A DNA stretch of 64,000 bases, from positions 310,001-374,000 of the forward strand of contig NW_026778917.1 in NCBI RefSeq assembly GCF_030144855.1, given 5' to 3'. Of the stretch, positions 1,146 through 63,525 are shown piece by piece (the stretch's first letter is position 1; every line of letters begins with the position of its first letter). The notes under the pieces are model-generated. The model was not told where the DNA came from and ran no database searches. It saw only the letters and a list, made by a program, of their open reading frames with translations. Source of the DNA: Hypanus sabinus. Its lineage: Eukaryota. The position numbers were made by a program, and so were the translations under genes.

Positions 1146-1172
1146 CGAGCTGGCTCTTCAATTCTTTGTACT
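1146..1172 (-). CDS. Butyrophilin-like gene, 27-nt cytoplasmic (heptad-type) exon; gene continues beyond window start
   Basis: Minus strand ttttctttctttcccttccag|AGTACAAAGAATTGAAGAGCCAGCTCG|gtaagt; phase 1-1; encodes EYKELKSQL. Confidence 0.8.
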
Positions 1173-1679
1173 CTGGAAGGGAAAGAAAGAAAACATACAA
1201 GGATTATATCACTTACTCGAGCTGCTAACATCTTCCACCAACAACCGCCAGCGCAAAGCCGTCAAAGATTCAGAACAGCCGCGTTTCAGGGGAAACGGCA
1301 CCAGAGCAGAGTGAAATGTCAGATCCCAGTGTCTGGCCGAATTGACCCGATGTTCGGACATTGATTTCGGCGCCAGGCCAGGCTGACACAGGTTGGGGGC
1401 CCAAGGCGAGGATCAGGCCAGTTCAGCTCTGCACTCAACTATGGACATTTAGTCCTGAACACTACTTGCATGATAGTTTTTTTTTCTCTCTGAACACTGG
1501 GTGTTCAACAGTCTTTTTTTAAAATGTTTTTCGGGGTTTCTTTGTTTCATGCCTGCCTGTTAGGAGACAACTCTCAATGCTGTGTTGTGTACTTTGATAA
1601 CAAACATACTTTGGATTTTAATAGAAAAGGGCCTAACTCGAGTGTGAAGTGATGCACTTTGGAAGGCTGAACCTGAGGG

Positions 1680-2085
1680 CAGGTTTCTTGGTGGTGTGGG
1701 GGACAGACGGATCGTCCCGAGATCGGTGTGCAAGTTATTCGGATGGTTAAGGTGGAGTACAGTGTGTTGACCTTCACTAGTCAGGGGACTGAGTTAAAGA
1801 GCCGCGAGGTAACGTTGCAGCTCTGTAAAACCCTGGTTAGACCAGACGGAATATCGCGCTCAGTTCTGGGAAGGACGTGGAAGCTTCAGAGAGGTGCCGA
1901 GGAGATTTCCCAGGATGCTGGCTGGATTACAAGGATAGGTTGAGAGAGCCAAGGCTTTTATCTTTGGAACGAAGGAGGATGAGGGGTGATTTGTTGGATG
2001 TGTGCCAGATGAGGAGGCCGCGACTATGTGGCCAGCCAGAGGCGTTTTCTCCACTGTGGCAATGGACAAAATGAGACAGGGGACG
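1680..2085 (+). mobile_element. Degenerate CR1 LINE 3' fragment
   Basis: Remnants of the CR1 RT C-terminus (LQLCKTLVRP; SLERRRMRGDL). Confidence 0.7.
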
Positions 2086-2124
2086 TCAGAAAATTTGTTT
2101 TCCTTCCCCCACAGAAAGTGGTGA

Positions 2125-4790
2125 GTGTGTAGAACAGCCGGCTGGGGTGGCAGTGGGGGCGGGAACAGCGCTGTGGAGGTGGGGACGGGAACGTCGCTGG
2201 GGGGGTGGCGGTGGGGACGGGAACGTCGCCGAGGGGGTGGCGGTGGGGACGGGAACTTCGCGGAGGTGGTGGCGGTGGGGACGGGAACGTTGCTGAGGGG
2301 GTGGCAGTGGGAACGGGAACGTCGCTGAGGGGGTGGCGCTGGGGACGGGAACGTTGCGGAGGTGGTGGCAGTGGGGTCGGGAACGTCGCTGAGGGGGTGG
2401 CGGTGGGGGCGGGAATGTCGCGGAGGTTGTGGTGGGGGGCGGGAACGTCGCTGGGGGGGGTGGGGGTGGGGACGGGAACGTCGCCGAGGGGGTGGCGGTG
2501 GGGACGGGAACATCGCCGAGGGGGGTGGCGGTGGGGACGGGAATGTCGCGGAGGTGGTGGTGGGGGGCGGGGAACGTCGCTGGGGGGGGGTGGGGGTGGG
2601 GACGGGAACGTCGCGGAGGTGGTGGTGGGGACGGGAATGTCGCGGAGGGGGGTGGCGGTGGGGACGGGAATGTCGCCGAGGGGGTGGCGGTGGGGACGGG
2701 AACGTCGCTGGGGTGGTGGCGGTGGGGACGGTAACTTCGCGGAGGTGGTGGCGGTGGGAACGGGAACGTCGCTGGGGGAGGTGGTGGCGGTGGGAACGGG
2801 AACGTCGCTGAGGGGGTGGGGGTGGGGGCGGGAACGTCGCCGAGGGGGTGGCGGTGGGGGCGGGAACGTCGCCGAGGGGGTGGCGGTGGGGGCGGGAACG
2901 TCGCCGAGGGGGTGGTGGTGGGGGCAGGAACGTCGCCGAGGGGGTGGCGGTGGGGACGGGAACGTCGCCGAGGGGGTGGTGGTGGGGACGGGAATGTCGC
3001 GGAGGGGGGTGGCGGTGGGGGCGGGAATGTCGCGGAGGTGGTGGTGGGGGCGGGAATGTCGCGGAGGTGGTGGTGGGGGCGGGAACGTCGCCGAGGGGGT
3101 GGCAGTGGGGACGGGAACGTCGCTGAGGGGGTGGCGGTGGGGGCGGGAATGTCGCGGAGGTGGTGGTGGGGGCGGGAACGTCGCTGGGGGGGTGGGGGTG
3201 GGGACGGGAACGTCGCGGAGGTGGTGGCGGTGGGGACGGGAATGTCGCGGAGGTGGTGGTGGGGACGGGAACGTCGCTGGGGGGGTGGGGGTGGGGATGG
3301 GAACGTCGCTGAGGGGGTGGGGGTGGGGACGGGAACGTCGCTGAGGGGGTGGTGGTGGGGGCAGGAACGTCGCCGAGGGGGTGGCGGTGGGGACGGGAAT
3401 GTCGCGGAGGGGGTGGCGGTGGGAACGGGAACGTTGCGGAGGTGGTGGCGGTGGGGACGGGAACGTCGCCGAGGGGGTGGCGGTGGGGACGGGATCGTCG
3501 CTGGGGGGGTGGCAGTGGGGGCGGGAATGTCGCGGAGGTGGTGGTGGGGACGGGAACGTCGCCGAGGGGGTGGCGGTGGGGACGGGATCGTCGCTGGGGG
3601 GGTGGGGGTGGGGATGGGAACGTCGCCGAGGGGGTGGCGGTGGGGACGGGAACTTTGCTGAGGGGGGTGGCGGTGGGGACGGGAATGTCGCCAAGGGGGT
3701 GGCGGTGGGGACGGGAATGTCGCGGAGGTGGTGGTGGGGGCGGGAACGTCGCTGGGGGGGGGTGGGGGTGGGGACGGGAACGTCGCCGAGGGGGTGGCGG
3801 TGGGGGCGGGGAACGTCGCTGACGGGGTGGCAGTGGGAACGGAACGTCGCCGAGGGGGTGGCGGTGGGGACAGGAATGTCGCGGAGGGGGTGGCGGTGGG
3901 GACGGGAACGTCGCCGAGGGGGTGGCGGTGGGGACGGGAACGTCGCTGAGGGGGTGGTGGTGGGGGCAGGAACGTCGCCGAGGGGGTGGCGGTGGGAACG
4001 GGAACGTCGCCGAGGGGGGTGGCGGTGGGGACGGGAACGTCGCCGAGGGGGTGGCAGTGGGGACGGGAACGTCGCCGAGGGGGTGGCGGTGGGGACGGGA
4101 ATGTCTCGGAGGGGGTGGCGGTGGGGACGGGAACGTCGCCGAGGGGGGTGGCGGTGGGGGCGGGAACGTCGCTGACGGGGTGGCAGTGGGAATGGGAACG
4201 TCGCCGAGGGGGTGGCGGTGGGGACGGGAATGTCGCGGAGGGGGGTGGCGGTGGGGACGGGAATGTCGCGGAGGGGGGTGGCGGTGGGGACGGGAATGTC
4301 GCGGAGGTGGTGGTGGTGGGGACGGGAACGTTGCGGAGGGGGTGGCGGTGGGAACGGGAACGTCGCTGAGGGGGTGGCGGTGGGGACGGGGACATCGCCA
4401 AGGGGGTGGTGGTGGGGGCGGGGAACGTCGCTGGGGGGGGTGGCGGTGGGGGCGGGAATGTCGCGGAGGTGGTGGTGGGGGCGGGGAACGTCGCTGGGGG
4501 GGGTGGGGACGGGAACGTCGCTGGGGAGGTGGGGGTGGGGATGGGAACGTCGCCGAGGGGGTGGTGGGGGGCGGGAACGTCGCTGGGGAGGTGGGGGTGG
4601 GGATGGGAATGTTGCGGAGGGGGTGGCGGTGGGGACGGGAACGTCGCAGAGGTGGTGGTGGGGGCAGGAACGTCGCTGACGGGGGTGGCGGTGGGGACGG
4701 GAACATCGCTGAGGTGGTGGGGGTGGGGACGGGAACATCGCTGAGCGGGTGGGGTGGGGGTGGGGACGGGAATATTGCTGAGATTTGGGA
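2125..4790. repeat. G-rich minisatellite, ~31-33 bp unit (gagggggtggcggtggggacgggaacgtcgcc)
   Basis: Directly visible tandem array of ~80 variant units; source of the 900-aa Pro-rich ORFs. Confidence 0.97.
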
Positions 4791-4943
4791 ATGGAAGAAC
4801 AATGGAGGGCTTCATGGAAGGGAAGAGTTAGTTGGAACTTGGAGTAGTTCAAAATGTCAGCAGAACATTGCGGGCCGAAGGGCCTGACTGTTCAACAAAA
4901 ACTTTGTTTTATATCACACTGAGGAACAATTACTGTGACTTAC

Positions 4944-4970
4944 CGACAGAAGTGGGCCGCAAAAACAATT
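4944..4970 (-). CDS. Butyrophilin-like gene, 27-nt cytoplasmic exon
   Basis: Minus strand cattcctcctctcttccag|AATTGTTTTTGCGGCCCACTTCTGTCG|gtaagt; phase 1-1; encodes ELFLRPTSV. Confidence 0.8.
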
Positions 4971-5711: not shown

Positions 5712-8625
5712 TACAGACTATGGATGGTCAGGACGAGGGAATAGAGGGAGCTCGGAATACCGGTGGGACAGACTATGGATGGTCAGGACAAGGGAACAGA
5801 GGGAGCTCGGAATACCGGTGGGACAGACTATGGACGGACAGGACGAGGGAACAGAGGGAGCTCGGAATACCGGTGGGACAGACTATGGACGGTCAGGACG
5901 AGGAAACAGAGGGAGCTCGGAATACCGGTGGGACAGACTATGGACGGTCAGGACGAGGGAACAGAGGGAGCTCGGAATACCGGTGGGACAGACTATGGAT
6001 GGTCAGGACGAGGGAACAGAGGGAGCTCGGATTACCGGTGGGACGGACTATGGATGGTCAGGACGAGGGAACAGAGGGAGCTCGGAACACCGGTGGGACA
6101 GACTATGGACGGACAGGACGAGGGAACAGAGGGAGCTCGGAATACCGGTGGGACAGACTATGGATGGTCGGGACGAGGGAACAGAGGGAGCTCGGATTAC
6201 CGGTGGGACGGACTATGGATGGTCAGGACGAGGGAACAGAGGGAGCTCGGAACACCGGTGGGACAGACTATGGATGGTCAGGACGAGGGAACAGAGGGTG
6301 CTCGGAATACCGGTGGGACAGACTATGGACGGTCAGGACGAGGGAACAGAGGGAGCTCGGAATACCGGTGGGACAGACTATGGACGGTCAGGACAAGGGA
6401 ACAGAGGGAGCTCGGAATACCGGTGGGACAGACTATGGATGGTCAGGACGAGGGAACAGAGGGAGCACGGAATACCGGTGGGACAGACTATGGACGGTCA
6501 GGACGAGGGAACAGAGGGAGCTCGGAACACCGGTGGGACAGACTATGGACGGTCAGGATGAGGGAACAGAGGGAGCTCGGAATACCGGTGGGACAGACTA
6601 TGGACGGTCGGGACGAGGGAACAGAGGGGGCTCGGAATACCGGTGGGACAGACTATGGACGGTCAGGACGAGGGAACAGAGGGAGCTCGGAATACCGGTG
6701 GGACAGACTATGGACGGTCGGTACGAGGGAACAGATGGAGCTCGGAATACCGGTGGGACAGACCATGGACGGTCGGTACGAGGGAACAGATGGAGCTCGG
6801 AATACCGGTGGGACAGACCATGGACGGTCAGGACGAGGGAACAGAGGGAGCTCGGAATACCGGTGGGACAGACCATGGATGGTCAGGACGAGGGAACAGA
6901 GGGAGCTCGGAATACCGGTGGGACAGACTATGGATGGTCAGGACGAGGGAACAGAGGGAGCTCGGAATACCGGTGGGACAGACTATGGATGGTCGGGACG
7001 AGGGAACAGAGGGAGCTCGGAACACCGGTGGGGCGGACTATGGATGGTCAGGACGAGGGAACAGAGGGAGCTCGGAACACCGGTGGGACAGACTATGGAC
7101 GGTCAGGACGAGGGAACAGAGGGTGCTCGGAATACCGGTGGGACAGACTATGGACGGTCAGGACGAGGGAACAGAGGGAGCTCGGAATACCGGTGGGACA
7201 GACTATGGACGGTCAGGACAAGGGAACAGAGGGAGCTCGGAATACCGGTGGGACAGACTATGGACGGTCAGGACGAGGGAACAGAGGGAGCACGGAATAC
7301 CGGTGGGACAGACTATGGACGGTCAGGACGAGGGAACAGAGGGAGCTCGGAACACCGGTGGGACAGACTATGGACGGTCAGGAGGAGGGAACAGAGGGAG
7401 CTCGGAATACCGGTGGGACAGACTATGGACGGTCGGGACGAGGGAACAGAGGGGGCTCGGAATACCGGTGGGACAGACTATGGACGGTCGGGACAAGGGA
7501 ACAGAGGGAGCTCGGAATACCGGTGGGACAGACTATGGACGGTCAGGACGAGGGAACAGAGGGAGCTCGGAATACCGGTGGGACAGACTATGGACGGTCG
7601 GGACGAGGGAACAGATGGAGCTCGGAATACCGGTGGGACAGACTATGGACGGTCGGGACGAGGGAACAGAGGGAGCTCGGAATACCGGTGGGACAGACTA
7701 TGGACGGTCGGGACGAGGGAACAGAGGGAGCTCGGAATACCGGTGGGACAGACTATGGACGGTCGGGACGAGGGAACAGATGGAGCTCGGAATACCGGTG
7801 GGACAGACCATGGACGGTCGGGACGAGGGAACAGAGGGAGCTCGGAATACCGGTGGGACAGACCATGGACGGTCAGGACGAGGGAACAGAGGGAGCTCGG
7901 AATACCGGTGGGACAGACTATGGATGGTCAGGACGAGGGAACAGAGGGAGCTCGGAATACCGGTGGGACAGACTATGGACGGTCAGGACGAGGGAACAGA
8001 GGAGCTCGGAATACCGGTGGGACAGACTATGGAGGGTCAGGACGAGGGAACAGAGGGAGCTCGGAATACCGGTGGGACAGACTATGGACGGTCAGGACGA
8101 GGGAACAGAGGGAGCTCGGAATACCGGTGGGACAGACTATGGACGGTCAGGACGAGGGAACAGAGGGAGCTCGGAATACTGGTGGGACAGACTATGGATG
8201 GTCAGGATGAGGGAACAGAGGGAGCTCGGAATACCGGTGGGACAGACTATGGATGGTCAGGATGAGGGAACAGAGGGAGCTCGGAATACCGGTGGGACAG
8301 ACTATGGATGGTCAGGATGAGGGAACAGAGGGAGCTCGGAATACCGGTGGGACAGACTATGGATGGTCAGGATGAGGGAACAGAGGGAGCTCGGAATACC
8401 GGTGGGACAGACTATGGATGGTCAGGATGAGGGAACAGAGGGAGCTCGGAATACCGGTGGGACAGACTATGGATGGTCAGGACGAGGGAACAGAGGGAGC
8501 TCGGAATACCGGTGGGACAGACTATGGATGGTCAGGACTAGGGAACAGAGGGAGCTCGGAATACCAGTGGGACAGACTATGGACGGTCGGGACGAGGGAA
8601 CAGAGGGAGCTCGGAATACCAGTGG
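5712..8625. repeat. Homogeneous 55-bp minisatellite, ~53 copies
   Basis: Unit gggacagactatggacggtcaggacgagggaacagagggagctcggaataccggt repeated head-to-tail without spacers. Confidence 0.98.
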
Positions 8626-9768: not shown

Positions 9769-9897
9769 CTTTCATCAGCTGGTCTCGGTGACGTTTTCTC
9801 ATCCAGAAGATGACAAATGCACAAATAACAGCCAAGAGGACCAAGAGGATGAACAGGAAACCCCACAGCCAGCCCGACGTCCTGGGGAAGAAGGCAT
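9769..9897 (-). CDS. Butyrophilin-like gene, transmembrane exon (129 nt)
   Basis: ctctgctctcttccctgcag|ATGCC...ATGAAAG|gtgtgt; phase 1-1; DAFFPRTSGWLWGFLFILLVLLAVICAFVIFWMRKRHRDQLMK (hydrophobic span plus basic stop-transfer). Not in the supplied ORF track. Confidence 0.92.
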
Positions 9898-17904: not shown

Positions 17905-18186
17905 CTGGTATCTCCAGCCGACCCTCGTACTCCCGGCCCAGAAGCTGGTTTTGGATGACACAGGAGTACACGCCAGGCGTGGCGTGACTCACAGCGATGA
18001 CACTCTCCACTCTCAGGAGCCCAGCATCGTCCGCTACCTCCGACTCCTTGTGTGCTGAGATGCGCTGACCCGCGGCGTCCCGCCACATCACTTGCGGCCG
18101 CGGGAACCACTTCTCCGAGATGCAGCCCACCAGGATCCCGTTGCCCTCGTAGCCCACCATCTTCATCGTGGGCTGCTGTCCCATAC
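17905..18186 (-). CDS. Butyrophilin-like gene, IgC exon (282 nt)
   Basis: cccctcccctccag|GTATGGGACAG...ATACCAG|gcatgt; SMGQQPTMKMVGYEGNGILVGCISEKWFPRPQVMW...YSCVIQNQLLGREYEGRLEIP matches the BTN IgC pattern (CxSxGWFPxP..W, YSC). Confidence 0.92.
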
Positions 18187-18828: not shown

Positions 18829-19176
18829 TGGCAACTTGCAGCTGCAGAGAGCCCTCCTCGTCCAGTGTCTTGGAGACCACGAAGCACTTGTAGCGTCCCG
18901 CATCGCGCACGGTCACCTTCTTCAGCAGCAGGGAGACGTTCCCCTGGGGAAAGGAGTCCTTGAACAGCTCCGTCCTCCCGGAGTACTGTGCTATCTGGGA
19001 CTCAGGACTGTCCTGCCCCTTCCGGTACAGGTGCACCACCTTGGACCAGTCCTCCCGGAACCAGCGCACCTCCATCTCCACAGGGACCTCGGCCGGAACC
19101 AGCTGGCAACCCAACACAGCATCCTGGCCGACCTCAGCCACGACAGGCTTGCTCGGAGTGACCACGATAAACTCCC
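18829..19176 (-). CDS. Butyrophilin-like gene, IgV exon (348 nt)
   Basis: cacgtccccag|GGGAGTTT...GTTGCCA|gtgagt; EFIVVTPSKPVVAEVGQDAVLGCQL...MEVRWFR...VVHLYRKGQD...QYSGRTELFKD...GNVSLLLKKVTVRDAGRYKCFV is the BTN/B-G/MOG-type IgV. Confidence 0.95.
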
Positions 19177-36811: not shown

Positions 36812-38623
36812 GTGGGGGACATTACCCGGGACGAGGAGTCCGCCGCCGTTTTCATTCAAACGAAGGAAGCTTTGGCGAACGCCGCAATGCTAGTACATCC
36901 CAGAATGGACGTCCCTACCGCCCTCACAGCGGACGCATCTAACACGGCAGTCGGTGGGGTGCTGGAGCAACGCATCGCAGGTCGCTGGCAACCCCTGGCG
37001 TTTTTCAGCAAACACCTGCGGCCACCCGAGCTCAAGTACAGTGCTTTCGACCGGGAACTGTTGGCGCTCTACCTGGCAATCCGGCATTTCAGGTACTTCT
37101 TAGAAGGTCGGCCCTTCACCGCGTTCACGGACCACAAACCGCTTACCTTTGCGTTTACGAAAGCATCCGACCCCTGGTCATCCCGCCAGCAACGCCACCT
37201 GTCCTACATCTCTGAATACACGACGGATGTCCGGCACGTCTCGGGTAAGGACAATGTCGTGGCGGATGCGCTTTCTCGCCCTACCGTTCATGCCCTTTCC
37301 CAAGGGGTAGACTTTGAGGCGCTGGCGGAGGCGCAGCAGGCGGATGAGGAGATTCCGAGTTACAGAACCGCAGTCTCCGGTTTGCAGCTCCAGGACCTCC
37401 CCGTGGGCCCGGGTGAGAGGACCCTACTCTGTGACGTCGCCACCGGCCAGCCCCGTCCGGTCGTCCCGGCAGCCTGGCGGCGGCGCGTTTTCGACTCCAT
37501 TCATAACTTGGCGCATCCTTCCATCCGGACAACTGTCCGGCTGGTTTCCAGCAGGTTCGTTTGGCACGGACTCCGCAAACAGGTCAGTGAATGGGCCAAA
37601 ACGTGCATGCACTGCCAGACGGCCAAGGTGCAGCGGCACACCAAAGCCCCACCGCAGCAGTTCCACCCCACCCGCCGGCGTTTCGACCACATTCATGTGG
37701 ATATCGTGGGTCCCCTGCCAGTGTCGCGCGGAGCGCGGCACCTCCTCACTATCGTGGACCGGTTCACCAGATGGCCAGAGGCGGTCCCGCTCACCGACAC
37801 CACCTCCGAATCTTGCGCCCGGGCACTGATCGCCACCTGGGCGTCCCGCTTTGGTGTGCCTGCCCACATTACCTCCGACAGAGGCGCCCAGTTCACCTCC
37901 AGCCTGTGGTCAGCTATGGTCAGCCTTTTGGGGACTCAGCTGCAGCACACCACTGCCTACCACCCACAGTCGAACGGGCTAGTGGAGCGTTTCCACCGTC
38001 ACCTGAAGTCGGCCCTCATGGCCCGCCTGCGAGGAGCTAACTGGGCGGACGAGCTTCCCTGGGTCCGACTCGGCATCCGCACAGCGCCCAAGGACGACCT
38101 GCACGCCTCGTCGGCCGAGTTGGTGTACGGCGCACCCCTGGTCGTCCCCGGGGAGTTCATACCGGCCCCAAGGGGGCAAGAGGAAGAACCCGCAGCAGTC
38201 CTGGGCAGACTACGCGAGAAGCTCGGTAACCTGGCCCCCATACCCACTTCACAGCACGGGCGGCACCCGACCTGCGTACCCAAAGACCTGCAGAACTGTA
38301 AGTTTGTGTTTGTACGAAGGGGCGGGCATCGGCCACCGCTGCAGCGGCCCTACGAGGGGCCGTTTACGGTGCTCCGCAACAACGGGTCCACGTTCGTGCT
38401 GGACGTTGGGGGGAAAGAGGAGGTTTTCACGGTGGACCGCCTCAAACCGGCCCATGTGGACCTGGCGCAACCGGCCGAGTTTCCGGCGCAGAGGCGCAGA
38501 GGCCGACCTCCCAAGCAGGTTCTGGCCCAGACTGTGGACATTGGGGGGTGTATCGCCGGTTCTGGGGGGGGGGGGTTATGTGGCGACCCATTTCCTGGCA
38601 CATCCGAACCGGCTCACAATTAG
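36812..38623 (+). CDS. pol: Gypsy pol remnant: RNase H plus integrase, open frame
   Basis: TADASNTAVGGVLEQ, YSAFDRELLALY, FTDHKPL, HNLAHP..CMHC zinc finger, HVDIVGP, SDRGAQF, NGLVERFH, PYEGPF; no protease or YxDD RT. Confidence 0.9.
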   Translation: MGDITRDEESAAVFIQTKEALANAAMLVHPRMDVPTALTADASNTAVGGVLEQRIAGRWQPLAFFSKHLRPPELKYSAFDRELLALYLAIRHFRYFLEGRPFTAFTDHKPLTFAFTKASDPWSSRQQRHLSYISEYTTDVRHVSGKDNVVADALSRPTVHALSQGVDFEALAEAQQADEEIPSYRTAVSGLQLQDLPVGPGERTLLCDVATGQPRPVVPAAWRRRVFDSIHNLAHPSIRTTVRLVSSRFVWHGLRKQVSEWAKTCMHCQTAKVQRHTKAPPQQFHPTRRRFDHIHVDIVGPLPVSRGARHLLTIVDRFTRWPEAVPLTDTTSESCARALIATWASRFGVPAHITSDRGAQFTSSLWSAMVSLLGTQLQHTTAYHPQSNGLVERFHRHLKSALMARLRGANWADELPWVRLGIRTAPKDDLHASSAELVYGAPLVVPGEFIPAPRGQEEEPAAVLGRLREKLGNLAPIPTSQHGRHPTCVPKDLQNCKFVFVRRGGHRPPLQRPYEGPFTVLRNNGSTFVLDVGGKEEVFTVDRLKPAHVDLAQPAEFPAQRRRGRPPKQVLAQTVDIGGCIAGSGGGGLCGDPFPGTSEPAHN

Positions 38624-38972
38624 CCAGCGTTCGGGCTAAGGGAGATAGCCTACGGGGGTTTGCGAGCACAGAGCTTTGGAGCCTCTGCGCCACGAGGGGC
38701 AGGTTGAGGGAGGCTTAAAAGCAAGGCTGGGTATTTCGAATAAAGTTTTCCTTCGACTGCAGTTACCGACTCCCATGTAGCACACAGCTACAATGAGTTA
38801 TTTTAAAGGGAATAGACTAAATACTCTGTATTAATCACTGCAGTGACTGCCATTAGTTCACTCTTATTCCAATTGATAGAGAAACCTGAGAAACTACCAA
38901 CATTAGTAATTAGAGTCAGAAGGGCGGGTATTGATGTTGGTGGGCTGGAGATATATAAAAGGACATCGTCAG

Positions 38973-39189
38973 TGTGGTGAACTACATATACCTGTCTGGA
39001 CACGCCCCCCTGCTGACTGCTCCTGTGGCTCCTCCCACAGACCCCTGTATAAAGGCGATCAAGGCCTGAGCCCGGCCTCTCAGTCTCCAGGATGTAGTAT
39101 GGGGGTCACTCACTGCTTGTTCCTTCCTCCAGTCAATAAAAGCCGATATCTTGCCTTACGTCTCAGAGTGAGTTATTGATGGTGCATCA
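38973..39189 (+). mobile_element. Solo LTR (217 bp)
   Basis: TG..CA ends, GTCAG 5-bp TSD (38968-72, 39190-94), internal tataaa and aataaa; splits the L1 YxDD codons. Confidence 0.85.
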
Positions 39190-40639
39190 GTCAGTATAAC
39201 AAAAGGTGATGTTTATGTTCATGTATATCAATGGGAGATATCAAAGCGTCCTGTCTGATGCTAACAGCCAGTGGCTCAATGATAACTGCAAACAAAAACA
39301 GAGAAAGAGGGCAGCCTTGACTAGTCCCACGATTAATTGCAAAAGGGGAGGAAATATTCTGATTAGTGATAATAGAGGCAGATGAGTGTGAATAAATTAT
39401 CTCAATCATTTGATGAAAGATGGTCCAGATCCAAATTTCTTAAGTGCAAACATCATATATGGCCATTCCACTTGGTGAAATGCATGTTGCGCATCTAATG
39501 AGATGACAACATCTGCATGCTTTGTATAAAGCTTACAACGTGACCAGAATGAATGTGACAAGTTACTGCTCAGAGATTTACAAACTGGCAAAACATCTGG
39601 GTAGAAGCTACGTAACTTTTCTTTAGAATAATGGAGTCTATGAATTTAGAGTTGTCAACAATCATCTTAAATGTTACAATGAAAATGAAGATTTGGAGGA
39701 TGAGACTGTGGACACTGTTGTATGAAAGCTGTCCATCATCTGGCCCGGTGTCTGTACTGATCTTGTTCATTCTGTACACTGCAGGGATTCCTCAGCTGAG
39801 AACTATTAGGAACTGATACACAGTTTGAAAGTACCAGAGTAGTTTCTAATTTGTTCTGTATTTCATTCAAATACATAACTTGATTCTCATTGTTTTTATT
39901 TTTCTTTCCAATGAAACCTCGGCTAATTTGGCCAAAATGTACCGGTCCTGGTATGAACTATAAATCACAGGTATTTATTTATTTTTGTTTAGGGTTTATT
40001 TTACATTTTGCAATGTACCACTGTCACAAAGCACCAAATTTCACAACATAGGTCAGTGATACTAAACCCAGTTCTGATTCTGAGGCCGAGCTCCTCCAGC
40101 AACACTGTGTGTTGCTCTGTATTTCCAGCGTCTGCACAAGCTCCTGACACACCATCAAATTCCCAGTCCAGACAGGTATGAAAGTAGAGCATTTTATTCC
40201 GCAACAATTTAGAAAACTGCTTGGTGCACAATGCACAAAATTATATACATCTTGCAAACAGTCCGCGTTTAACGCAATGACAGTTCGTTCCGTGAAACAC
40301 ACACATTTATTAACAGTCCGCCATAAACACGGTTTTTAGACCAATCCACGAAAGTCCGCAGTTTAACAGGGTTCTTGGCCGAATCCTTGAAAGACACACA
40401 TTATAGAGCAGAATAAGGTGCTCTCTCTTCCTCCTGTACATACCGTGCGGGTTGGGGTGACCTGGAACAGACAACGCCCGTTACAGGGCACGGTGAAAGT
40501 CTAGAGCGAGTGAAGCGGGCAGGGCACAAGTAACCGTGGCAAAGCTACAAAGCCAGTGGTTTCAGTGGGCTCCTCCATTCCGTCCGCCAGTACAGCCGAG
40601 GTTTCCTGACGGCCAGCCATTGCAACTGGACCTCCCGTT

Positions 40640-44471: not shown

Positions 44472-44486
44472 TTATTGACTCTTCTC
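44472..44486 (-). CDS. TAPBP: Tapasin terminal coding exon (exon 8): EKSQ*
   Basis: tgctgtttatctctttctag|GAG AAG AGT CAA TAA; phase 0 matches the exon 7 end; gives C-terminus KEKSQ (KxKxx ER-retrieval motif). Confidence 0.7.
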   Translation of the reverse strand, partial: EKSQ

Positions 44487-51910: not shown

Positions 51911-52356
51911 GGGGGGGGGGGTGTTTCAGAGATGCTAATTCCTACGTTTTGACTGGTTGTATCTCCATCTGATATGAAGGAGTGGCTATTGGCACACGAT
52001 TGGCTAAAGCTGCAGAGGTGGAATTTCAGCCAGCTCCATCATGGACACCAACCTCCCCAGCACCGAGAACACCTTCAAAAGGAGATGCTGATAACAAAAG
52101 GCAGCATCCATCGTTAAGCACCCCCATCACCCAGGACATGCCCACTTTTCATTGCTGCCATCAGGGAGGAGGTCCAGACACTGAAGACACACACTCAATG
52201 TTTCAGGAACAGCTTCTTCCCCTCCACCATCAGATTCCTGAATGGACAATGAACACTTCCTCACTGCTCTCATGGGCACGACTTATTTCATTTGATTGTT
52301 TACATACATGTATATACGAGATATGTCAGCGAAATTAAGTCTGATTCTGAAGTTAC

Positions 52357-52394
52357 CTTTTCTCCATCCTCTGTCCCAACGCTGAGTGCAGAAC
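52357..52394 (-). CDS. TAPBP: Tapasin exon 7 (38 nt, cytoplasmic tail)
   Basis: tcttgtctgtcctgcag|GTTCT...GAAAAG|gtaact; phase 1-0; GSALSVGTEDGEK. Confidence 0.75.
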
Positions 52395-52499: not shown

Positions 52500-55350
52500 A
52501 AGGGGGTCACAGAGACAGGGAGGGGTGTGGGGGGGTCACAGAGACAGGGATGGGTGTGGGGGTCAGAGTTGGGGGGGGTCACAGAGACAGGGAGGGGTGT
52601 GGGGGTTGGAGTTGGGGGTCAGAGACAGGGAGGGTTGTGGGGTTAGAGTTGGGGGTCATAGAGACAGGGAGGGGTGTGGGGGGGTCAGAGTTGGGTGGTC
52701 ACAGAGACAGGGAGGGGTGTGGGGGTCAGAGTTGGGGGGTCACAGAGACAGAGAGGGGTGTGGGGGCTAGAGTTGGGGGGTGTTACAGAGACAGAGGGGT
52801 GTAGGGGTCAGTTGGGAGGTCACAGAGACAGGGAGGGGTGTGGGGGTCAGTTGGGGGGTCACAGAGACAGGGAGGGTGTGGGGGTCAGAGTTGGGGGGTC
52901 ACAGAGACAGGGAGGGTGTGGGGGTCAGAGTTGGGGGGTCACAGAGACAGGGAGGGGTGTGGGGGTTGGAGTTGGGGGTCAGAGACAGGGAGGTGTGGGG
53001 GGTCACAGAGACAGGGAGGGGTGTGGGGGTCACAGAGACAGGGAGGGGTGTGGGGGTCAGAGTTGGCGTGTTACAGAGAGAGAGGGGTGTGGGGGCTGGA
53101 GTTGAGGGGTCACAGAGACAGAGAGGGGTGTGGGGGCTAGAGTTGGGGGGTGTTACAGAGACAGAGAGGGGTGTAGGGGTCAGAGTTGGGAGGTCACAGA
53201 GACAGGGAGGGGTGTAGGGGTCAGAGTTAGGGGGTGTTACAGAGACAGGGAGCGGACTGGGGACTGGAGGGGGTCACAGAGACAGGAAGGGGTGTGGGGG
53301 TCAGTTGGGGGTCAGAGACAGGGAGGGGTGTGGGGGCTAGAGTTGGGGGGTGTTACAGAGACAGAGGGGTGTAGGGGTCAGAGTTGGGAGGTCACAGAGA
53401 CAGGGAGGGGTGTGGGGGTCAGAGTTGGGGTGTTACAGAGAGAGAGGGGTGTGGGGGCTGGAGTTGAGGGGTCACAGAGACAGAGAGGGGTGTGGGGGCT
53501 AGAGTTGGGGGGTGTTACAGAGACAGAGAGGGGTGTGGGGGTCAGTTGGGGGGTCACAGAGACAGGGAGGGTGTGGGGGTCAGAGTTGGGGGGTCACAGA
53601 GACAGGGAGGGTGTGGGGGTCAGAGTTGGGGGGTCACAGAGACAGGGAGGGGTGTGGGGGTTGGAGTTGGGGGTCAGAGACAGGGAGGTGTGGGGGGTCA
53701 CAGAGACAGGGAGGGGTGTGGGGGTCACAGAGACAGGGAGGGGTGTGGGGGTCAGAGTTGGCGTGTTACAGAGAGAGAGGGGTGTGGGGGCTGGAGTTGA
53801 GGGGTCACAGAGACAGAGAGGGGTGTGGGGGCTAGAGTTGGGGGGTGTTACAGAGACAGAGAGGGGTGTAGGGGTCAGAGTTGGGAGGTCACAGAGACAG
53901 GGAGGGGTGTAGGGGTCAGAGTTAGGGGGTGTTACAGAGACAGGGAGCGGACTGGGGACTGGAGGGGGTCACAGAGACAGGAAGGGGTGTGGGGGTCAGT
54001 TGGGGGTCAGAGACAGGGAGGGGTGTGGGGGCTAGAGTTGGGGGGTGTTACAGAGACAGAGGGGTGTAGGGGTCAGAGTTGGGAGGTCACAGAGACAGGG
54101 AGGGGTGTGGGGGTCAGTTGGGGGGTCACAGAGACAGGGAGGGTGTGGGGGTCAGAGTTGGGGGGGTCACAGAGACAGGGAGGGTGTGGGGGTCAGAGTT
54201 GGGGGGTCACAGAGACAGGGAGGGGTGTGGGGGTTGGAGTTGGGGGTCAGAGACAGGGAGGTGTGGGGGGTCACAGAGACAGGGAGGGGTGTGGGGGTCA
54301 CAGAGACAGGGAGGGGTGTGGGGGTCAGAGTTGGGGTGTTACAGAGACAGGGAGCGGACTGGGGACTGGAGGGGGTCACAGAGACAGGAAGGGGTGTGGG
54401 GGTCAGTTGGGGTGTCACAGAGACAGGGAGGGGTGTGGGGGTCAGAGTTGGGGTGTTACAGAGAGAGAGGGGTGTGGGGGCTGGAGTTGAGGGGTCACAG
54501 AGACAGAGAGGGGTGTGGGGGCTAGAGTTGGGGGGTGTTACAGAGACAGAGAGGGGTGTAGGGGTCAGAGTTGGGAGGTCACAGAGACAGGAAGGGGTGT
54601 GGGGGTCAGTTGGGGGGTCACAGAGACAGGGAGGGTGTGGGGGTCAGAGTTGGGGGGTCACAGAGACAGGGAGGGTGTGGGGGTCAGAGTTGGGGGGTCA
54701 CAGAGACAGGGAGGGGTGTGGGGGTTGGAGTTGGGGGTCAGAGACAGGGAGGTGTGGGGGGTCACAGAGACAGGGAGGGGTGTGGGGGTCACAGAGACAG
54801 GGAGGGGTGTGGGGGTCAGAGTTGGGGTGTTACAGAGACAGGGAGCGGACTGGGGACTGGAGGGGGTCACAGAGACAGGAAGGGGTGTGGGGGTCAGTTG
54901 GGGGTCAGAGACAGGGAGGGGTGTGGGGGTCAGAGTTAGGGGGTGAAACAGAGGGAGCGGTCTGTGGGCTGGAGGGGGTCACAGAGACAGGGAGGGGTGT
55001 GGGGGTCAGTTGGGGGGTCACAGAGACAGGGAGAGGTGTGGGGGTCAGAGTTAGGGGGTGTTACAGAGACAGGGAGCAGTCTGGGGGCTGGAGGGGTTCA
55101 CAGAGACAGGGAGGGGTGTGGGGGTCAGAGTTAGGGGATGTTACAAGAGAGAGGGGTGAGGGTCAGAGTTGGGGGTTCAGACAGAAAGGGGTGTGGGGGT
55201 CAGAGTTGGGGGGTCACAGACAGGGAGGGGTGTGGGGGTCAGTTGGGGGGTCACAGAGACAGGGAGGGGTGTGGGGGTCAGAGTTAGGGGGTGTTACAGA
55301 GACAGGGGGCAGTCTGGGGGCTGGAGGGGGTCACAGACAGGAAGGGGTGT
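52500..55350. repeat. G-rich ~38-40-bp minisatellite (gggggtcacagagacagggaggggtgtgggggtcagagtt)
   Basis: Directly visible tandem array in TAPBP intron 6. Confidence 0.97.
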
Positions 55351-55453
55351 GGGGGCCTAAAGATCACAAGCCGGATTGTCCGTACAGGGATCAGCTCCCG
55401 CTCTCCCTGTCGATATCCACCCCCAGCCCCAGCGGACGGCAGTAGGAGCTCAC

Positions 55454-55555
55454 CTTGAGGGAACACAAAACAGTACAGCAGTTTCAGAGCCCCGTACAGG
55501 ACAAAGGCACAGACCAGCATCCCCACCGCGTCCTCCACCGAGGGTCCCGACACTC
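55454..55555 (-). CDS. TAPBP: Tapasin exon 6 (transmembrane, 102 nt)
   Basis: atgtctccacag|GAGTG...CCTCAAG|gtgagc; GVSGPSVEDAVGMLVCAFVLYGALKLLYCFVFPQ parallels human GLSGPSLEDSVGLFLSAFLLLGLFKAL, including the intramembrane Lys. Confidence 0.92.
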
Positions 55556-56441: not shown

Positions 56442-56765
56442 CTGCCACCTTCAGTGTCAGGCTCTTCCTGACCCCACCCTTCATGGAGACGTGCTGCGCG
56501 TGGCAGGTGTAGACGGTGCCGTGATCGGCAGCGGTAGGGCGGACCGAGATGACGCCGGTCACGTTGAAGGTGCCGTCGCTGTTCTTGTTGTGTCCGTTCA
56601 GCCAGCTGTTGGGCAGCAGCTCTGCGCTGCCGTTACCAGGGGCCCTGCGGGTCCACGTCATGCTGACGTCCAGCGGGTAGTAGCCCAGTGCCTCACACAG
56701 GATGTCCTGCGCCTGGTCCGGATACAGGTACAGCGGGTCGGGTCTCAGCACCAGTGTCGGTGGCT
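56442..56765 (-). CDS. TAPBP: Tapasin exon 5 (IgC1, 324 nt)
   Basis: gtgtctgtgcag|AGCCA...GTGGCAG|gtaaag; EPPTLVL...LCEALGYYPLDVSMTW...DGTFNV...YTCHAQHVS...SLTLKVA. Confidence 0.93.
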
Positions 56766-58884: not shown

Positions 58885-60475
58885 AGCACCCCGCTATCCT
58901 GTCAGTCACCCCGCTATCCTGTCAGTCACCCCGCTATCCCGTCTGTCACCCCGCTATCCCGTCAGTCACCCCGCTATCCAGTCACCCCGCTATCCCGTCA
59001 GTCACCCCGCTATCCCGTCAGTCACCCCGCTATCCTGTCAGTCACCCCGCTATCCTGTCAGTCACCCCGCTATCCAGTCACCCCGCTATCCCGTCAGTCA
59101 CCCCGCTATCCCGTCAGTCACCCCGCTATCCCGTCAGTCACCCCCCTATCCTGTCAGCCACCCCGCTATCCTGTCAGCCACCCCGCTATCCTGTCAGTCA
59201 CCCCGCTATCCTGTCAGTCACCCCGCTATCCCGTCAGTCACCCCCCTATCCTGTCAGTCACCCCGCTATCCTGTCAGTCACCCCCCTATCCTGTCAGTCA
59301 CCCCGCTATCCTGTCAGTCACCCCGCTATCCTGTCAGTCACCCCGCTATCCAGTCACCCCGCTATCCCGTCAGTCACCCCGCTATCCCGTCAGTCACCCC
59401 GCTATCCCGTCAGCCACCCCGCTATCCTGTCAGCCACCTCGCTATCCTGTCAGTCACCCCGCTATCCTGTCACCCCGCTATCCCGTCAGCCACCCCGCTA
59501 TCCAGTCACCCCGTTATCCCGTCAGTCACCCCGCTATCCCGTCAGTCACCCCGCTATCCCGTCAGTCACCCCGCTATCCCGTCAGCCACCCCGCTATCCC
59601 GTCAGTCACCCCGCTATCCCGTCAGTCACCCCGCTATCCCGTCAGCCACCCCGCTATCCCGTCAGCCACCCCGCTATCCCGTCAGTCACCCCGCTATCCC
59701 GTCAGCCACCCCGCTATCCCGTCAGCCACCCCGCTATCCCGTCAGTCACCCCGCTATTCTGTCAGTCACCCCGCTATCCTGTCAGTCACCCCGCTATCCT
59801 GTCAGCCCGCTATCCTGTCAGTCACCCTGCTATCCTGTCAGTCACCCCGCTATCCTGTCAGTCACCCCGCTATCCTGTCAGTCACCCCGCTATCCTGTCA
59901 ATCACCCCGCTATCCTGTCAGCCACCCCGCTATCCTGTCAGTCACCCCGCTATCCTGTCAGTCACCCCGCTATCCTGTCAGTCACCCCGCTATCCTGTCA
60001 ATCACAACGCTATCCTCAGCCACCCCGCTATCCTGTCAGTCACCCCGCTATCCTGTCAGTCACCCCGCTATTCTGTCAGTCACCCCGCTATCCTGTCAGT
60101 CACCCCGCTATCCTGTCAATCACCCCGCTATCCTGTCAGCCACCCCGCTATCCTGTCAGTCACCCCGCTATCCTGTCAATCACCCCGCTATCCTGTCAGC
60201 CACCCCGCTATCCTGTCAGTCACCCCGCTATCCTGTCAGTCACCCCGCTATCCCGTCAGTCACCCCGCTATCCCGTCAGTCACCCCGCTATCCCGTCAGT
60301 CACCCCCCTATCCCGTCAGTCACCCCGCTGTCCCGTCAGTCACCCCGCTGTCCTGTCAGTCACCCCGCTATCCTGTCAGTCACCCCGCTATCCCGTCAGT
60401 CACCCCGCTATCCCGTCAGTCACCCCGCTATCCCGTCAGCCACCCCGCTATCCCGTCAGCCACCCCGCTATCCTG
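58885..60475. repeat. C-rich 20-bp minisatellite (caccccgctatcctgtcagt), ~80 units
   Basis: Directly visible tandem array in TAPBP intron 4. Confidence 0.98.
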
Positions 60476-61275: not shown

Positions 61276-61726
61276 AGATGGTACAACAGCGGTGCTTAAA
61301 AGGCTCTTAGAGAGAGACACTTGACAATGCAGGAAATGGGTGTGAGGAGATATAGGCTGTAGAAAGCAGAAGTGATTACTTTAATTTGGCACCACATTCA
61401 GCACAAAATGGACAGGCAAAAGGGCCAGTTCCTGTTCTACGTTCAGCCCCAGGTTTAGGGATGTCCTGTGGGGTCAGATTCTGCTCTAATTCTTTATATC
61501 CTCTCCACAGGACCCACTACCTACGTTGCTGGTAACAATACGTCCCACTGTCCAGCCCTCCCCTTCAGAATGCTGTGAGCACCCCTCGGAAACAACATAC
61601 CACCCGAGTGTCCTGTTCACGTCCACAGTATCCACTTTCTGCCCCTCTAACGATGGAAAAGCCTATCGCCACAGGGGTACAGAGGGGCGATGACAGAGGG
61701 GCGAGGGCAATGAAGGGTGGACATAC

Positions 61727-62068
61727 CTAAGATGTGGAGGCTAACAGCCTGCTGGGCCTGCAGGTTGGGGGCATACACGGTGCAGATATACGTGCCATCC
61801 TGCTGTAGGCGCACGTTGCGCAGGACCAGGGACGCGTTCCCGTGGCTGTGGAGAAGGTTCATCAGGAGTTCGGCACCCTCCTGCGCTATATGTACGCGGT
61901 CCTGCAGTCCGTTGTAGGCATAAACCACGTGCCCCGAGCCTTCGAACTGGTATCGCCACTCCACCGCGAATCCCATCGACCGGTCCAGCGTGAAGCCACA
62001 GTCCAGCAGGACATCCTGACCCTGCCTGGCACTGACCTGAGGCATCCGGCTGAAGACATTCAGCACAA
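61727..62068 (-). CDS. TAPBP: Tapasin exon 4 (IgV-like, 342 nt)
   Basis: ctgtctcctgcag|TTGTG...ATCTTAG|gtatgt; VVLNVFSRMPQVSARQGQDVLLDCGF...FAVEWRYQFEGSGH...AQEGA...GNASL...GTYICTV parallels human VVLTVLTHTPAPRVRLGQDALLD...FGLEWRRQHLGKGH...AQEGA. Confidence 0.93.
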
Positions 62069-62129
62069 CTGCAGGAGACAGAGAGGAGGGAGCCACAATC
62101 AGCAAGGGGAACTGGAGACGAGCAGAGAA

Positions 62130-63195
62130 AGCACACCCCCCCTCAGCATCTCACACAATGCACCACCCCTCAGTATCGTCCCTCCCACACTGAGACTCAC
62201 CCTCAGTCTTGCCCCTCCCACACTGAGACTCTCCCTCAGTACCACCCCTCCCACAGTGTGACCCACCCTATACCACCCCTCACAGTGACTCTCCCTCTGT
62301 ACCACCCCTCCCTCTGTGCAGCACTCCCTCAGTATCGTCCCTCCCACACTGAGACTCTCCCTCAGTCGCCCCTCCCATAGCGCGACTCTCCCTCAGTCTT
62401 GCCCCTCCCACACTGACTCTCCCTCTGTACCACTCCTCCCACAGTGACTCTCCCTCTGTACCATCCCTCCCACAGTGTGACCCTCCCTCAGTACCACCCC
62501 TCCTACAGTGTGACCCTCCCTCTGTACCACCCCTCCCACAGTGACTCTCCCTCGGTACCCCCCTCCCACAGTGTGACCCACCCTCAGTACCACCCCTCCC
62601 ACACTGACTCTCCCTCGGTACCACCCCTCCCACACTGACCCTCCCTCGGTACCACCCCTCCCACACTGACCCTCCCTCGTTACCACCCCTCCCACACTGA
62701 CTCTCCCTCAGTACCCCCCTCCCACAGCGCGACTCTCCCTCAGTCTTGCCCCTCCCACACTGACTCTCCCTCTGTACCATCCCTCCCACAGTGTGACCCT
62801 CCCTGTACCACCCCTCCCACACCGACTCTCCCTCGGTACCCCCCTCCCACGGTGTGACTCTCCCTCAGTACCCCCCTCCCACTGTGTGACTCTCCCTTGG
62901 TACCCCCCTCCCACACTGACTCTCCCTCGGTACCACCCCTCCCACACTGACTCTCCCTCGGTACCCCCCCTCCCACACTGACTCTCCCTCGGTACCCCCC
63001 CTCCCACAGTGTGACTCTCCCTCGGTACCCCCCTCCCACACTGACCCACCCTCGGTACCCCCCTCCCACAGTGTGACTCTCCCTCGGTACCCCCCTCCCA
63101 CAGTGACTCTCCCTCAGTACCCCCCCCTCCCACAGTGTGACTCTCCCTCGGTACCCCCCTCCCACAGTGTGACTCTCCCTCGGTACCCCCCTCTC
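62130..63195. repeat. C-rich ~31-33-bp minisatellite (cccctcccacagtgtgactctccctcggtacc)
   Basis: Directly visible variant tandem array in TAPBP intron 3. Confidence 0.93.
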
Positions 63196-63252
63196 ACACT
63201 GACAAGCCTTCACTGCCGACTGGGCTCCCCAGCAGGACCAGGGCAGGTGTAC

Positions 63253-63525
63253 CTGAGGTTTGCACAGGCGCAGGATCCTCTTCTCCTGCGGGCTCTGACA
63301 CCACGCGGTGCAGACTGCTCACGCTGAAGGAGCGGTCGTGGGTGTGCAGGTGCGTGCTGAACCAGCGGCCTGACTGATAAGCCGGCGTTCGTTCGTCTTC
63401 GGACAGGTGCGCGGCCCAGGCCAGAATGGAGTCCTGGGGAAGGTACTTATTAATCTCACAGCCGTGCTTCTCCCTCACGTCCGCCGGCTGGCGAAACCCC
63501 GCATGTCCCGTAACCCGAGAGTGAT
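63253..63525 (-). CDS. TAPBP: Tapasin exon 3 (N-terminal domain, 273 nt); earlier exons lie beyond the window
   Basis: ctcctctccggaacag|ATCAC...ACCTCAG|gtacac; CEINKYLPQDSILAWAAHLS...GRWF...FSVSSLHR is collinear with human CEMSRFVPLPASAKWASGLT...GAWL...LSLSSLLR. Confidence 0.88.

What the first reader, a model, noticed from the sequence alone, without database searches (positions are those of the whole stretch)
1146..63525. Tapasin directly followed by a butyrophilin-like gene in the same orientation
Seen: TAPBP ends at ~44.5 kb and a BTN-like transcription unit starts at ~31.9 kb, with only repeats and one unique CpG-containing patch between. Established: human TAPBP lies between ZBTB22 and RGL2, with the BTN cluster megabases away; chicken TAPBP sits between the class II B genes. 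Inference: this is an MHC segment of a probable cartilaginous fish, where a peptide-loading gene abuts a candidate gamma-delta T-cell ligand. This could be ancestral linkage of B7-family relatives or a lineage-specific unit.
Basis: partly seen in the sequence, partly recalled or inferred. Interest (0 to 1): 0.8.

Follow-up and report, generated by a model that had tools for sequence, protein, structure and literature searches.

The report
Stingray tapasin gene beside a butyrophilin
In the Atlantic stingray, the gene for the MHC class I loading helper tapasin really is followed directly by a butyrophilin gene, but both genes are already annotated and this tight pairing looks like a local reshuffle of a long-known immune gene neighbourhood, so it is ordinary.

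Summary
The window is Hypanus sabinus DNA (a 916,947-bp contig, no N). On the minus strand it carries exons 3-8 of true tapasin (RefSeq XP_059813472, 100% match). Next comes a butyrophilin (XP_059813471, "BTN2A1-like", 100% match) from its start to its second 27-nt micro-exon. Its B30.2 exon lies about 18 kb beyond the window start.

A tree separates TAPBP from TAPBPL with 100/99 support, and the window gene sits inside the cartilaginous-fish TAPBP clade.

Position 44.5 kb is only the stop codon. A block 77% identical to the sawfish TAPBP 3' UTR, with its poly(A) signal, puts the transcript end near 40.2 kb. The "unique patch" is therefore tapasin's own UTR. The rest of the gap is transposon remains.

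The tight pairing is not general. The sawfish has another gene after TAPBP, with butyrophilins 0.4-1.1 Mb away. In the sevengill shark the two genes are 329 kb apart on opposite strands. The white shark has CLIC1 there. Accession order hints at closeness only in other stingrays, Mobula and the horn shark. Butyrophilin-MHC linkage is already known, including in a published sawfish gene table.

Other notes of this scan (s1-146610, s1-172484) cover this same stretch. Interest is low.

The parts
63253..63525 (-). TAPBP (tapasin) exon for N-terminal domain part 2 (residues 93-183 of XP_059813472)
   Evidence: 100% tblastn match to P0175. Acceptor AG just upstream of 63525 and a GT donor after 63253.
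61727..62068 (-). TAPBP IgV exon
   Evidence: Pfam V-set, E = 6.8e-12. 63% identical to Callorhinchus tapasin and 35% to shark TAPBPR-like. GT-AG junctions.
56442..56765 (-). TAPBP IgC1 exon
   Evidence: Pfam C1-set. 100% match to P0175. Junctions.
55454..55555 (-). TAPBP transmembrane exon, with a Lys inside the helix (LYGALKLLY)
   Evidence: tblastn to P0175, P0005 and P0004. Junctions.
52357..52394 (-). TAPBP cytoplasmic tail exon (GSALSVGTEDGEK)
   Evidence: Exact peptide match. Junctions.
44472..44486 (-). TAPBP last coding bases (EKSQ plus stop). The C-terminus KEKSQ is a KxKxx-type dilysine motif.
   Evidence: Polypyrimidine tract and AG acceptor at 44488-44487.
40150..40520 (-). Probable distal TAPBP 3' UTR with poly(A) signal AATAAA at 40198-40193.
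   Evidence: 77% identity over about 400 bp to the end of the sawfish TAPBP 3' UTR (L001 22440-22860). The shared AATAAA lies about 20 nt before the RefSeq gene end 934,977.
34398..39645 (-). LINE remnant (reverse-transcriptase pieces) split by an inserted LTR element
   Evidence: Pfam RVT_1 and zf-RVT hits in colinear order on the minus strand.
35944..38699 (+). Internally deleted Gypsy-like LTR retroelement (gag-like DUF7041, RNase H, integrase) with terminal direct repeats
   Evidence: Pfam hits. A 122-nt direct repeat, 96% identical, at 35944-36065 and 38578-38699.
31000..32500 (-). CpG island and putative BTN promoter with non-coding exon 1. It holds three copies of a ~60-bp unit with GGGGCGGGG and TGACGT, an imperfect ISRE-like CAAAGTGAAAGT near 31868-31857, and a GTAAGT donor whose G is at 31794.
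   Evidence: GC 0.69 and CpG observed/expected 0.85. Sequence read directly. The strict ISRE pattern was not matched. No RNA evidence.
29025..29100 (-). BTN start codon and signal-peptide exon (MTGYSRAMKWQYLLAILLLLVTTSLG)
   Evidence: 100% match to P0247. Junction. An acceptor-like TTTCAG lies about 30 nt upstream of the ATG.
18829..19176 (-). BTN IgV exon
   Evidence: Pfam V-set, E = 1.3e-12. The best single-domain PDB matches are BTNL8, BTNL3, MOG and BTN. 100% match to P0247.
17905..18186 (-). BTN IgC exon, followed by a non-canonical GC donor
   Evidence: Pfam C2-set_3 (butyrophilin Ig-C), E = 8.5e-23. Donor read.
9769..9897 (-). BTN transmembrane exon
   Evidence: 100% match to P0247 residues 236-278. 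Boundaries.
4944..4970 (-). BTN 27-nt micro-exon (ELFLRPTSV)
   Evidence: Exact peptide match and AG/GTAAGT flanks.
1146..1172 (-). BTN 27-nt micro-exon (EYKELKSQL), the last BTN exon inside the window
   Evidence: Exact peptide match and AG/GTAAGT flanks.

Best explanation
The window holds two separate, already annotated stingray genes lying head to tail: the peptide-loading chaperone tapasin (TAPBP) and, about 8 kb past its poly(A) site, a classical B30.2-bearing butyrophilin.

Tapasin has what an ER-resident TAP-docking class I chaperone needs: an N/IgV domain, an IgC1 domain, a transmembrane lysine and a KxKxx tail. The butyrophilin is a surface IgV-IgC protein with a micro-exon stalk and a cytoplasmic PRY/SPRY sensor domain.

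They sit together because the cartilaginous-fish extended class II / class III part of the MHC is rich in butyrophilin and TRIM (B30.2) genes and is often rearranged. In the stingray lineage one butyrophilin ended up immediately downstream of TAPBP.

Shown: gene identities, exon maps, contiguity, orthology of TAPBP, and non-conservation of the direct pairing in three other elasmobranchs.

Inferred: the contig is MHC, the BTN promoter position, independent transcription of the two genes, and the functions of both proteins.
For: - Identity: P0175 and P0247 match the window exons at 100% and lie on the same 916,947-bp contig. Their RefSeq numbers are consecutive.
- Orthology: the TAPBP/TAPBPL split has 100/99 support, and the window gene nests with Hemitrygon, Mobula, Pristis and Narcine TAPBP. 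The full-length PDB search favours tapasin at 162 bits over TAPBPR at 109 bits.
- BTN: human BTN2A1 is the best solved match over residues 12-511, E = 2.9e-88. PRY and SPRY hits are on record for the product.
- Separate genes: NCBI models them apart. A poly(A) signal conserved with sawfish ends TAPBP near 40.2 kb. A CpG island with a GTAAGT donor precedes the BTN coding start.
- Gap content: LINE and LTR retroelement remains.
- Upstream side conserved: a SOUL/HEBP2-like gene lies upstream of TAPBP in Pristis, Heptranchias and Heterodontus. A first-stage note places one ~30 kb upstream here too.
- Downstream side differs: Pristis has si:ch73-95l15.5 and then NELFE. White shark has CLIC1. The Heptranchias BTN ortholog is 329 kb away on the opposite strand. 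No BTN exon lies within 10 kb after TAPBP in Pristis or Heptranchias.
Against: - Accession numbers place TAPBP and the BTN ortholog close together in Hemitrygon, both Mobula species and the horn shark Heterodontus (443 against 445). The pairing may therefore be older than stingrays.
- No coordinates could be fetched for those genomes.
- No RNA data were available, so read-through or co-regulation is not excluded.
- The stingray contig is unplaced. It was not shown here to carry class I, TAP or PSMB genes.
Confidence: 0.82

Rival explanations
1. The TAPBP-then-BTN tandem is the ancestral elasmobranch (or older) arrangement. It was kept in stingrays, Mobula and the horn shark, and broken independently in sawfish, electric ray, sevengill, carpet sharks and white shark.
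For: Near-consecutive RefSeq numbers in Hemitrygon, Mobula birostris, Mobula hypostoma and Heterodontus. TAPBP and the BTN ortholog share a contig in every species where both were found, including the 4.1-Mb Callorhinchus scaffold.
Against: It needs at least four or five independent break-ups. In Heptranchias a gap of only 11 accession numbers corresponds to 329 kb and opposite strands, so number proximity does not show adjacency. Reedfish has RGL2 next to tapasin, as in human.
Confidence: 0.13
2. The two genes form a co-regulated, interferon-responsive module: a shared enhancer or read-through transcription links class I peptide loading with display of a butyrophilin ligand.
For: Same orientation and a gap of only about 8 kb. 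An ISRE-like CAAAGTGAAAGT lies in the BTN CpG island. Butyrophilin genes coregulated with MHC genes are known in mouse (title of PMC4749920).
Against: The motif fails the strict ISRE pattern. A conserved poly(A) signal ends TAPBP. The pairing is not conserved. NCBI models two separate genes. There are no expression data.
Confidence: 0.04
3. The juxtaposition is an assembly artefact that joins two unrelated regions between 32 and 44 kb.
For: The contig is a small unplaced piece. A 96-97% identical partial BTN copy (P0288) lies on a 187-Mb chromosome.
Against: There is no N in the window. The gap holds a coherent nested structure, a colinear LINE split by an LTR element with matching terminal repeats. 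In the close relative Hemitrygon, the two genes have neighbouring accession numbers and lie on contigs of the same length, 214,355,867 bp.
Confidence: 0.01

Closest known systems
Tapasin (TAPBP) of jawed vertebrates, e.g. Callorhinchus 'tapasin long form' and human tapasin in the peptide-loading complex (PDB 6ENY, 3F8U)
   Same: Same domain order. It falls in the TAPBP clade. There is a transmembrane lysine and a C-terminal dilysine-type motif. An ortholog lies in the sawfish MHC chromosome.
   Different: Thr stands at the position that I take, from my memory of the human sequence, to match the ERp57-binding Cys95 (also first-stage notes s1-146720 and s1-172485). The introns are swollen by minisatellites. 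The downstream neighbour is a butyrophilin, not RGL2 as in human and reedfish.
Human BTN2A1, BTN3A1 and BTN3A3 (extended MHC class I region)
   Same: IgV, BTN-type IgC, transmembrane segment, coiled stalk and B30.2. BTN2A1 is the best solved match over nearly the full length, E = 2.9e-88.
   Different: Only 30-36% identical to the mammalian butyrophilins in the search. No one-to-one orthology to any mammalian BTN was shown. No evidence of phosphoantigen sensing or gamma-delta TCR binding.
Chicken MHC-B: an authentic butyrophilin gene and BG1 at the edge of the compact BF/BL region that also holds TAPBP (PMC8813856)
   Same: A butyrophilin-family gene lies within a short distance of TAPBP in a compact MHC.
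Sawfish (Pristis pectinata) MHC chromosome 34 gene table, Verissimo et al. 2023 (PMC10751288, supplement)
   Same: HEBP2-like gene, then TAPBP, in the same orientation. Many butyrophilin and TRIM-like genes are in the same region, next to ATF6B, OLFML2, CENPA and TNXB.
   Different: TAPBP is followed by si:ch73-95l15.5 and NELFE. The nearest butyrophilin entry starts about 420 kb away.

Membership tests
Tapasin (TAPBP) | Groups with TAPBP rather than TAPBPL/TAPBPR in a phylogeny | tested here: met
   A 29-sequence ML tree gives the split 100/99 support, with the window gene inside cartilaginous-fish TAPBP.
Tapasin (TAPBP) | N-terminal domain fused to an IgV-like domain, then IgC1, transmembrane segment and a short tail | tested here: met
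   Pfam V-set and C1-set hits. Exon-by-exon matches to shark and chimaera tapasins. The PDB tapasin match covers residues 15-432.
Tapasin (TAPBP) | Basic residue in the transmembrane helix used for TAP docking | tested here: met
   Lys in LYGALKLLY. The same column holds K or R in other cartilaginous-fish tapasins. Equivalence to human K408 is from my own knowledge.
Tapasin (TAPBP) | C-terminal dilysine ER-retrieval motif | tested here: met
   The protein ends KEKSQ (K at -3 and -5), encoded at 44486-44472.
Tapasin (TAPBP) | Free cysteine for the ERp57 disulphide (human Cys95) | tested here: inconclusive
   The sequence reads DERTPAY, with Thr 24 residues after the conserved Cys. The human numbering comes from memory and from first-stage notes, with no direct alignment to the human protein shown. 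Other cartilaginous-fish tapasins also have Thr. This may not be a defining feature outside mammals.
Tapasin (TAPBP) | Location in the MHC | tested here: inconclusive
   The sawfish ortholog is in the MHC chromosome, and its upstream neighbour type is conserved. The stingray contig itself was not tied to class I, TAP or PSMB genes.
Butyrophilin (B30.2-bearing BTN) | IgV plus BTN-type IgC ectodomain | tested here: met
   V-set E = 1.3e-12 and C2-set_3 E = 8.5e-23.
Butyrophilin (B30.2-bearing BTN) | Single transmembrane segment followed by a stalk built from short exons | tested here: met
   Transmembrane exon 9897-9769. Two 27-nt micro-exons with AG/GTAAGT flanks.
Butyrophilin (B30.2-bearing BTN) | Cytoplasmic PRY/SPRY (B30.2) domain | tested here: met
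   PRY and SPRY hits are on record for the annotated product P0247, and residues 295-511 match BTN2A1 B30.2 chains. The exon lies outside the window, about 18 kb beyond its start.
Butyrophilin (B30.2-bearing BTN) | Acts as a ligand or regulator of gamma-delta T cells | not testable with these tools
   This rests only on analogy with mammalian BTN and BTNL proteins.

The most novel reading that the evidence does not exclude
TAPBP followed by this 509-516-residue butyrophilin is an old elasmobranch gene pair, kept in stingrays, manta relatives and the horn shark. It would be driven by interferon-type elements so that class I peptide loading and a butyrophilin stress or T-cell signal rise together. 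[quoted passage not shown]
Probability: 0.06. Interest if true: 0.5.

Novelty: new member of a known kind. Interest (0 to 1): 0.18.

Why it matters
It adds one small data point to the picture of the cartilaginous-fish MHC. Butyrophilin and other B30.2 genes are interleaved with extended class II and class III genes, and in stingrays one of them sits right after tapasin. This fits the long-held view that B7 and butyrophilin relatives belong to the old MHC neighbourhood. It opens no new question, and it does not by itself suggest a joint function. Its practical value is a corrected exon map and a corrected TAPBP 3' end.

Tried and rejected
- TAPBPR reading. Single-exon PDB searches ranked human TAPBPR above human tapasin. 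I rejected this after the library-wide search, the named clusters, the tree and the full-length PDB search.
- B7-H3 (CD276) reading of the second gene. CD276 topped the exon searches only because its two repeated domains add up. The full protein is BTN2A1-like and has B30.2.
- Neighbour look-ups. For Hypanus, Hemitrygon, Mobula, Heterodontus and white shark they returned no DNA and no coordinates, so adjacency there rests on accession order only.
- Accession-order calibration. On Heptranchias, 11 numbers correspond to 329 kb and opposite strands, which shows that heuristic is weak.
- BTN exons after TAPBP. A search within 10 kb downstream of TAPBP in Pristis and Heptranchias found none.
- Promoter conservation. 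None was found between the stingray and sevengill BTN upstream regions.
- ISRE. A strict ISRE pattern scan did not hit the BTN CpG island.
- Literature. Flajnik et al. 2012 on B7 and the MHC could not be read.
- Earlier notes. A words search found no notes on CLIC1, NELFE, SKIV2L or VPS52 in this genome.


Full report
**What the window is.** The 64-kb window has no N. It is vertebrate DNA rich in retroelements and minisatellites. Exon-sized open frames on the minus strand gave V-set and C1-set hits at 61.7-62.1 and 56.4-56.8 kb. They also gave V-set and butyrophilin-type C2-set_3 hits at 18.8-19.2 and 17.9-18.2 kb. Notes of this scan called the genome a stingray. A profile search then returned 'tapasin-like isoform X1 [Hypanus sabinus]' (P0175, 456 aa). 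Its residues 93-456 match the window exons at 100%. A second profile search returned 'butyrophilin subfamily 2 member A1-like [Hypanus sabinus]' (P0247, 516 aa), which also matches at 100%. Both proteins lie on a contig of the same length, 916,947 bp, in assembly GCA_030144855.1. Their RefSeq numbers are consecutive: XP_059813471, then 472 and 473.

**Exon maps.** A small spliced-alignment script and direct reading gave TAPBP exons at 63525-63253, 62068-61727, 56765-56442, 55555-55454, 52394-52357 and 44486-44472, the last ending in the stop codon. All junctions are GT-AG. The butyrophilin exons are 29100-29025 (Met and signal peptide), 19176-18829 (IgV), 18186-17905 (IgC), 9897-9769 (transmembrane), and two 27-nt micro-exons at 4970-4944 and 1172-1146.

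In the sawfish locus the reported gene range starts at the first residue of the protein, so I take these ranges to run from start codon to stop codon. On that reading the NCBI spans of 29,034 and 47,551 bp place the TAPBP start codon near 73.5 kb. They place the BTN stop about 18 kb before the window start. Neither gene is complete here, and the B30.2 exon is outside the window.

That ranking does not hold up:
- In a search of 1.8 billion representatives, the best single-domain hits were tapasins of chimaera, caecilian, alligator, turtle, anole, teleost and paddlefish at 100-164 bits. TAPBPR-like proteins scored about 75-81 bits.
- The IgV exon is 63% identical to Callorhinchus tapasin and 35% to sevengill TAPBPR-like.
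- A 29-sequence maximum-likelihood tree separates TAPBP from TAPBPL at 100/99. It nests the window gene with Hemitrygon, Mobula, Pristis and Narcine TAPBP in species order.
- The full-length protein scores 162 bits against human tapasin and 109 against TAPBPR.
- It has a lysine in the transmembrane helix and ends KEKSQ, a dilysine-type motif.

**The second gene.** The full product matches human BTN2A1 over residues 12-511 (E = 2.9e-88), then BTN3A3 and BTN3A1. It carries PRY and SPRY hits. Elasmobranchs mostly gave one best hit per species at 50-80% identity, many of them 509 aa long. It is therefore a classical butyrophilin, not merely 'BTN-like'. A role towards gamma-delta T cells is analogy only.

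**The gap between the genes.** The stop codon is at 44474-44472. Comparing the 10 kb after sawfish TAPBP with the window found a colinear block. Window 40520-40100 is 77% identical to L001 22440-22860 and includes a shared GGAATAAA. In sawfish this lies about 20 nt before the published RefSeq gene end, 934,977. The stingray TAPBP transcript therefore most likely ends near 40.17 kb. The 'unique CpG-containing patch' (CpG observed/expected 0.72 at 40.0-40.5 kb) is its distal 3' UTR.

Between there and 32.5 kb lie pieces of a LINE in colinear order. They are split by an internally deleted Gypsy-like element with 96% identical terminal repeats. Such a coherent nested structure argues against a misjoin.

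A CpG island at 31.0-32.5 kb (GC 0.69, observed/expected 0.85) holds three copies of a ~60-bp unit with a GC box and TGACGT. It also holds an imperfect ISRE-like CAAAGTGAAAGT and a GTAAGT donor whose G is at 31794. The ATG exon has an acceptor-like TTTCAG about 30 nt upstream of the ATG. A non-coding exon 1 near 31.8-31.9 kb is thus plausible but unproven, and the strict ISRE pattern is not met. The likely intergenic distance is about 8 kb.

**Is this MHC, and is the pairing conserved?** The supplement of Verissimo et al. 2023 (PMC10751288) lists sawfish chromosome 34 in this order: DAXX, KIFC1, RNF5, B3GALT4, VPS52, GPANK1, SLAMF9-like, HEBP2-like, TAPBP, si:ch73-95l15.5, NELFE, SKIV2L, C2/BF, ZBTB12-like, EHMT2, SLC44A4. 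After these come TRIM-like genes and butyrophilin entries beside ATF6B, OLFML2A-like, CENPA, CYP21A2, TNXB and PPT2.

The upstream SOUL/HEBP2-like gene is also called next to TAPBP in Pristis, Heptranchias and Heterodontus. A first-stage note reports one ~30 kb upstream of tapasin in this genome (not checked by me). The stingray locus therefore looks orthologous to the MHC-embedded TAPBP locus, although I could not show class I, TAP or PSMB genes on the stingray contig.

Downstream, the picture differs by species:
- Sawfish has si:ch73-95l15.5, and its nearest butyrophilin entry starts about 420 kb away.
- White shark has CLIC1.
- In the sevengill shark, TAPBP lies at 1.636-1.661 Mb on the plus strand and the BTN ortholog at 1.990-2.004 Mb on the minus strand of CM068675.1. 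That is 329 kb apart and convergent.
- No BTN exon lies within 10 kb after TAPBP in either Pristis or Heptranchias.

TAPBP and the BTN ortholog do lie on contigs of the same length in Heptranchias, Heterodontus, Chiloscyllium punctatum, Narcine, Hemitrygon, Mobula and Callorhinchus. RefSeq numbers are close in Hemitrygon (865-881 against 887), Mobula birostris (509 against 514-516), Mobula hypostoma (945 against 952) and Heterodontus (443 against 445). They are far apart in Narcine, Chiloscyllium and Hemiscyllium. The sevengill calibration, where 11 numbers correspond to 329 kb and opposite strands, shows that closeness in numbering is only a hint.

**Reading.** The loose linkage of tapasin with butyrophilins is old and general. 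It is already implicit in a published gene table. It also fits known MHC-linked butyrophilins such as the chicken butyrophilin and BG1 at the edge of the BF/BL region (PMC8813856). The immediate head-to-tail pairing is shown only in this stingray. It is probably shared by close relatives, and it is absent in at least three other elasmobranchs. Nothing points to a joint transcription unit. Both genes are already annotated. I therefore rate this an accurate observation of ordinary significance.

**Limits.**
- No RNA data were available.
- No coordinates could be obtained for five genomes.
- The main text of the 2023 paper does not discuss tapasin or butyrophilins.
- The key B7/MHC paper could not be read.

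Noticed in passing
window 17905-17800 (minus strand): The intron after the BTN IgC exon has a non-canonical GC donor, and the frame stays open for 33 more codons into the intron. Two truncated gene models end in exactly this read-through peptide: P0288 'BTNL8' of H. sabinus on a 187-Mb chromosome (96-97% identical) and P0284 of Mobula birostris. This suggests either a soluble intron-retaining isoform or partial duplicate copies.
   Followed up: partly
window 2173-4759, 5713-8625, 49102-51921, 52530-55355, 58887-60475, 62180-63203: Six minisatellite arrays with periods of 20-55 nt (one also reads as 125 nt) and 32-81 copies. Together they make up about 21% of the window. All lie inside introns of the two genes, and most are strongly G- or C-skewed.
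   Followed up: partly
window 40100-40520 against L001 22440-22860: The distal TAPBP 3' UTR is 77% identical between stingray and sawfish over about 400 bp. That is much better kept than its surroundings and may carry regulatory elements.
   Followed up: partly
window 63388-63386 (minus strand), residues DERTPAY of tapasin: Thr stands where mammalian tapasin has the ERp57-binding cysteine. The other cartilaginous-fish tapasins seen here share the Thr, so ERp57 conjugation may work differently or be absent.
   Followed up: partly
window 31900-32100 (minus strand): Three tandem copies of a ~60-bp unit, each with GGGGCGGGG and TGACGT, lie just upstream of the putative BTN exon 1.
   Followed up: no
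L002 31830-32348 (Heptranchias) and the white shark locus: The BTN ortholog is flanked by, or nested antisense within, another B30.2 gene. There is a convergent B30.2 exon in the sevengill shark, and a RING-B-box-PRY/SPRY TRIM model overlapping the gene in white shark.
   Followed up: no
L001 1-6214, L003 1-7180, Heterodontus locus: A SOUL/HEBP2-like gene directly upstream of TAPBP, on the same strand, is conserved in sawfish, sevengill and horn shark. This neighbour is not part of the human MHC.
   Followed up: partly
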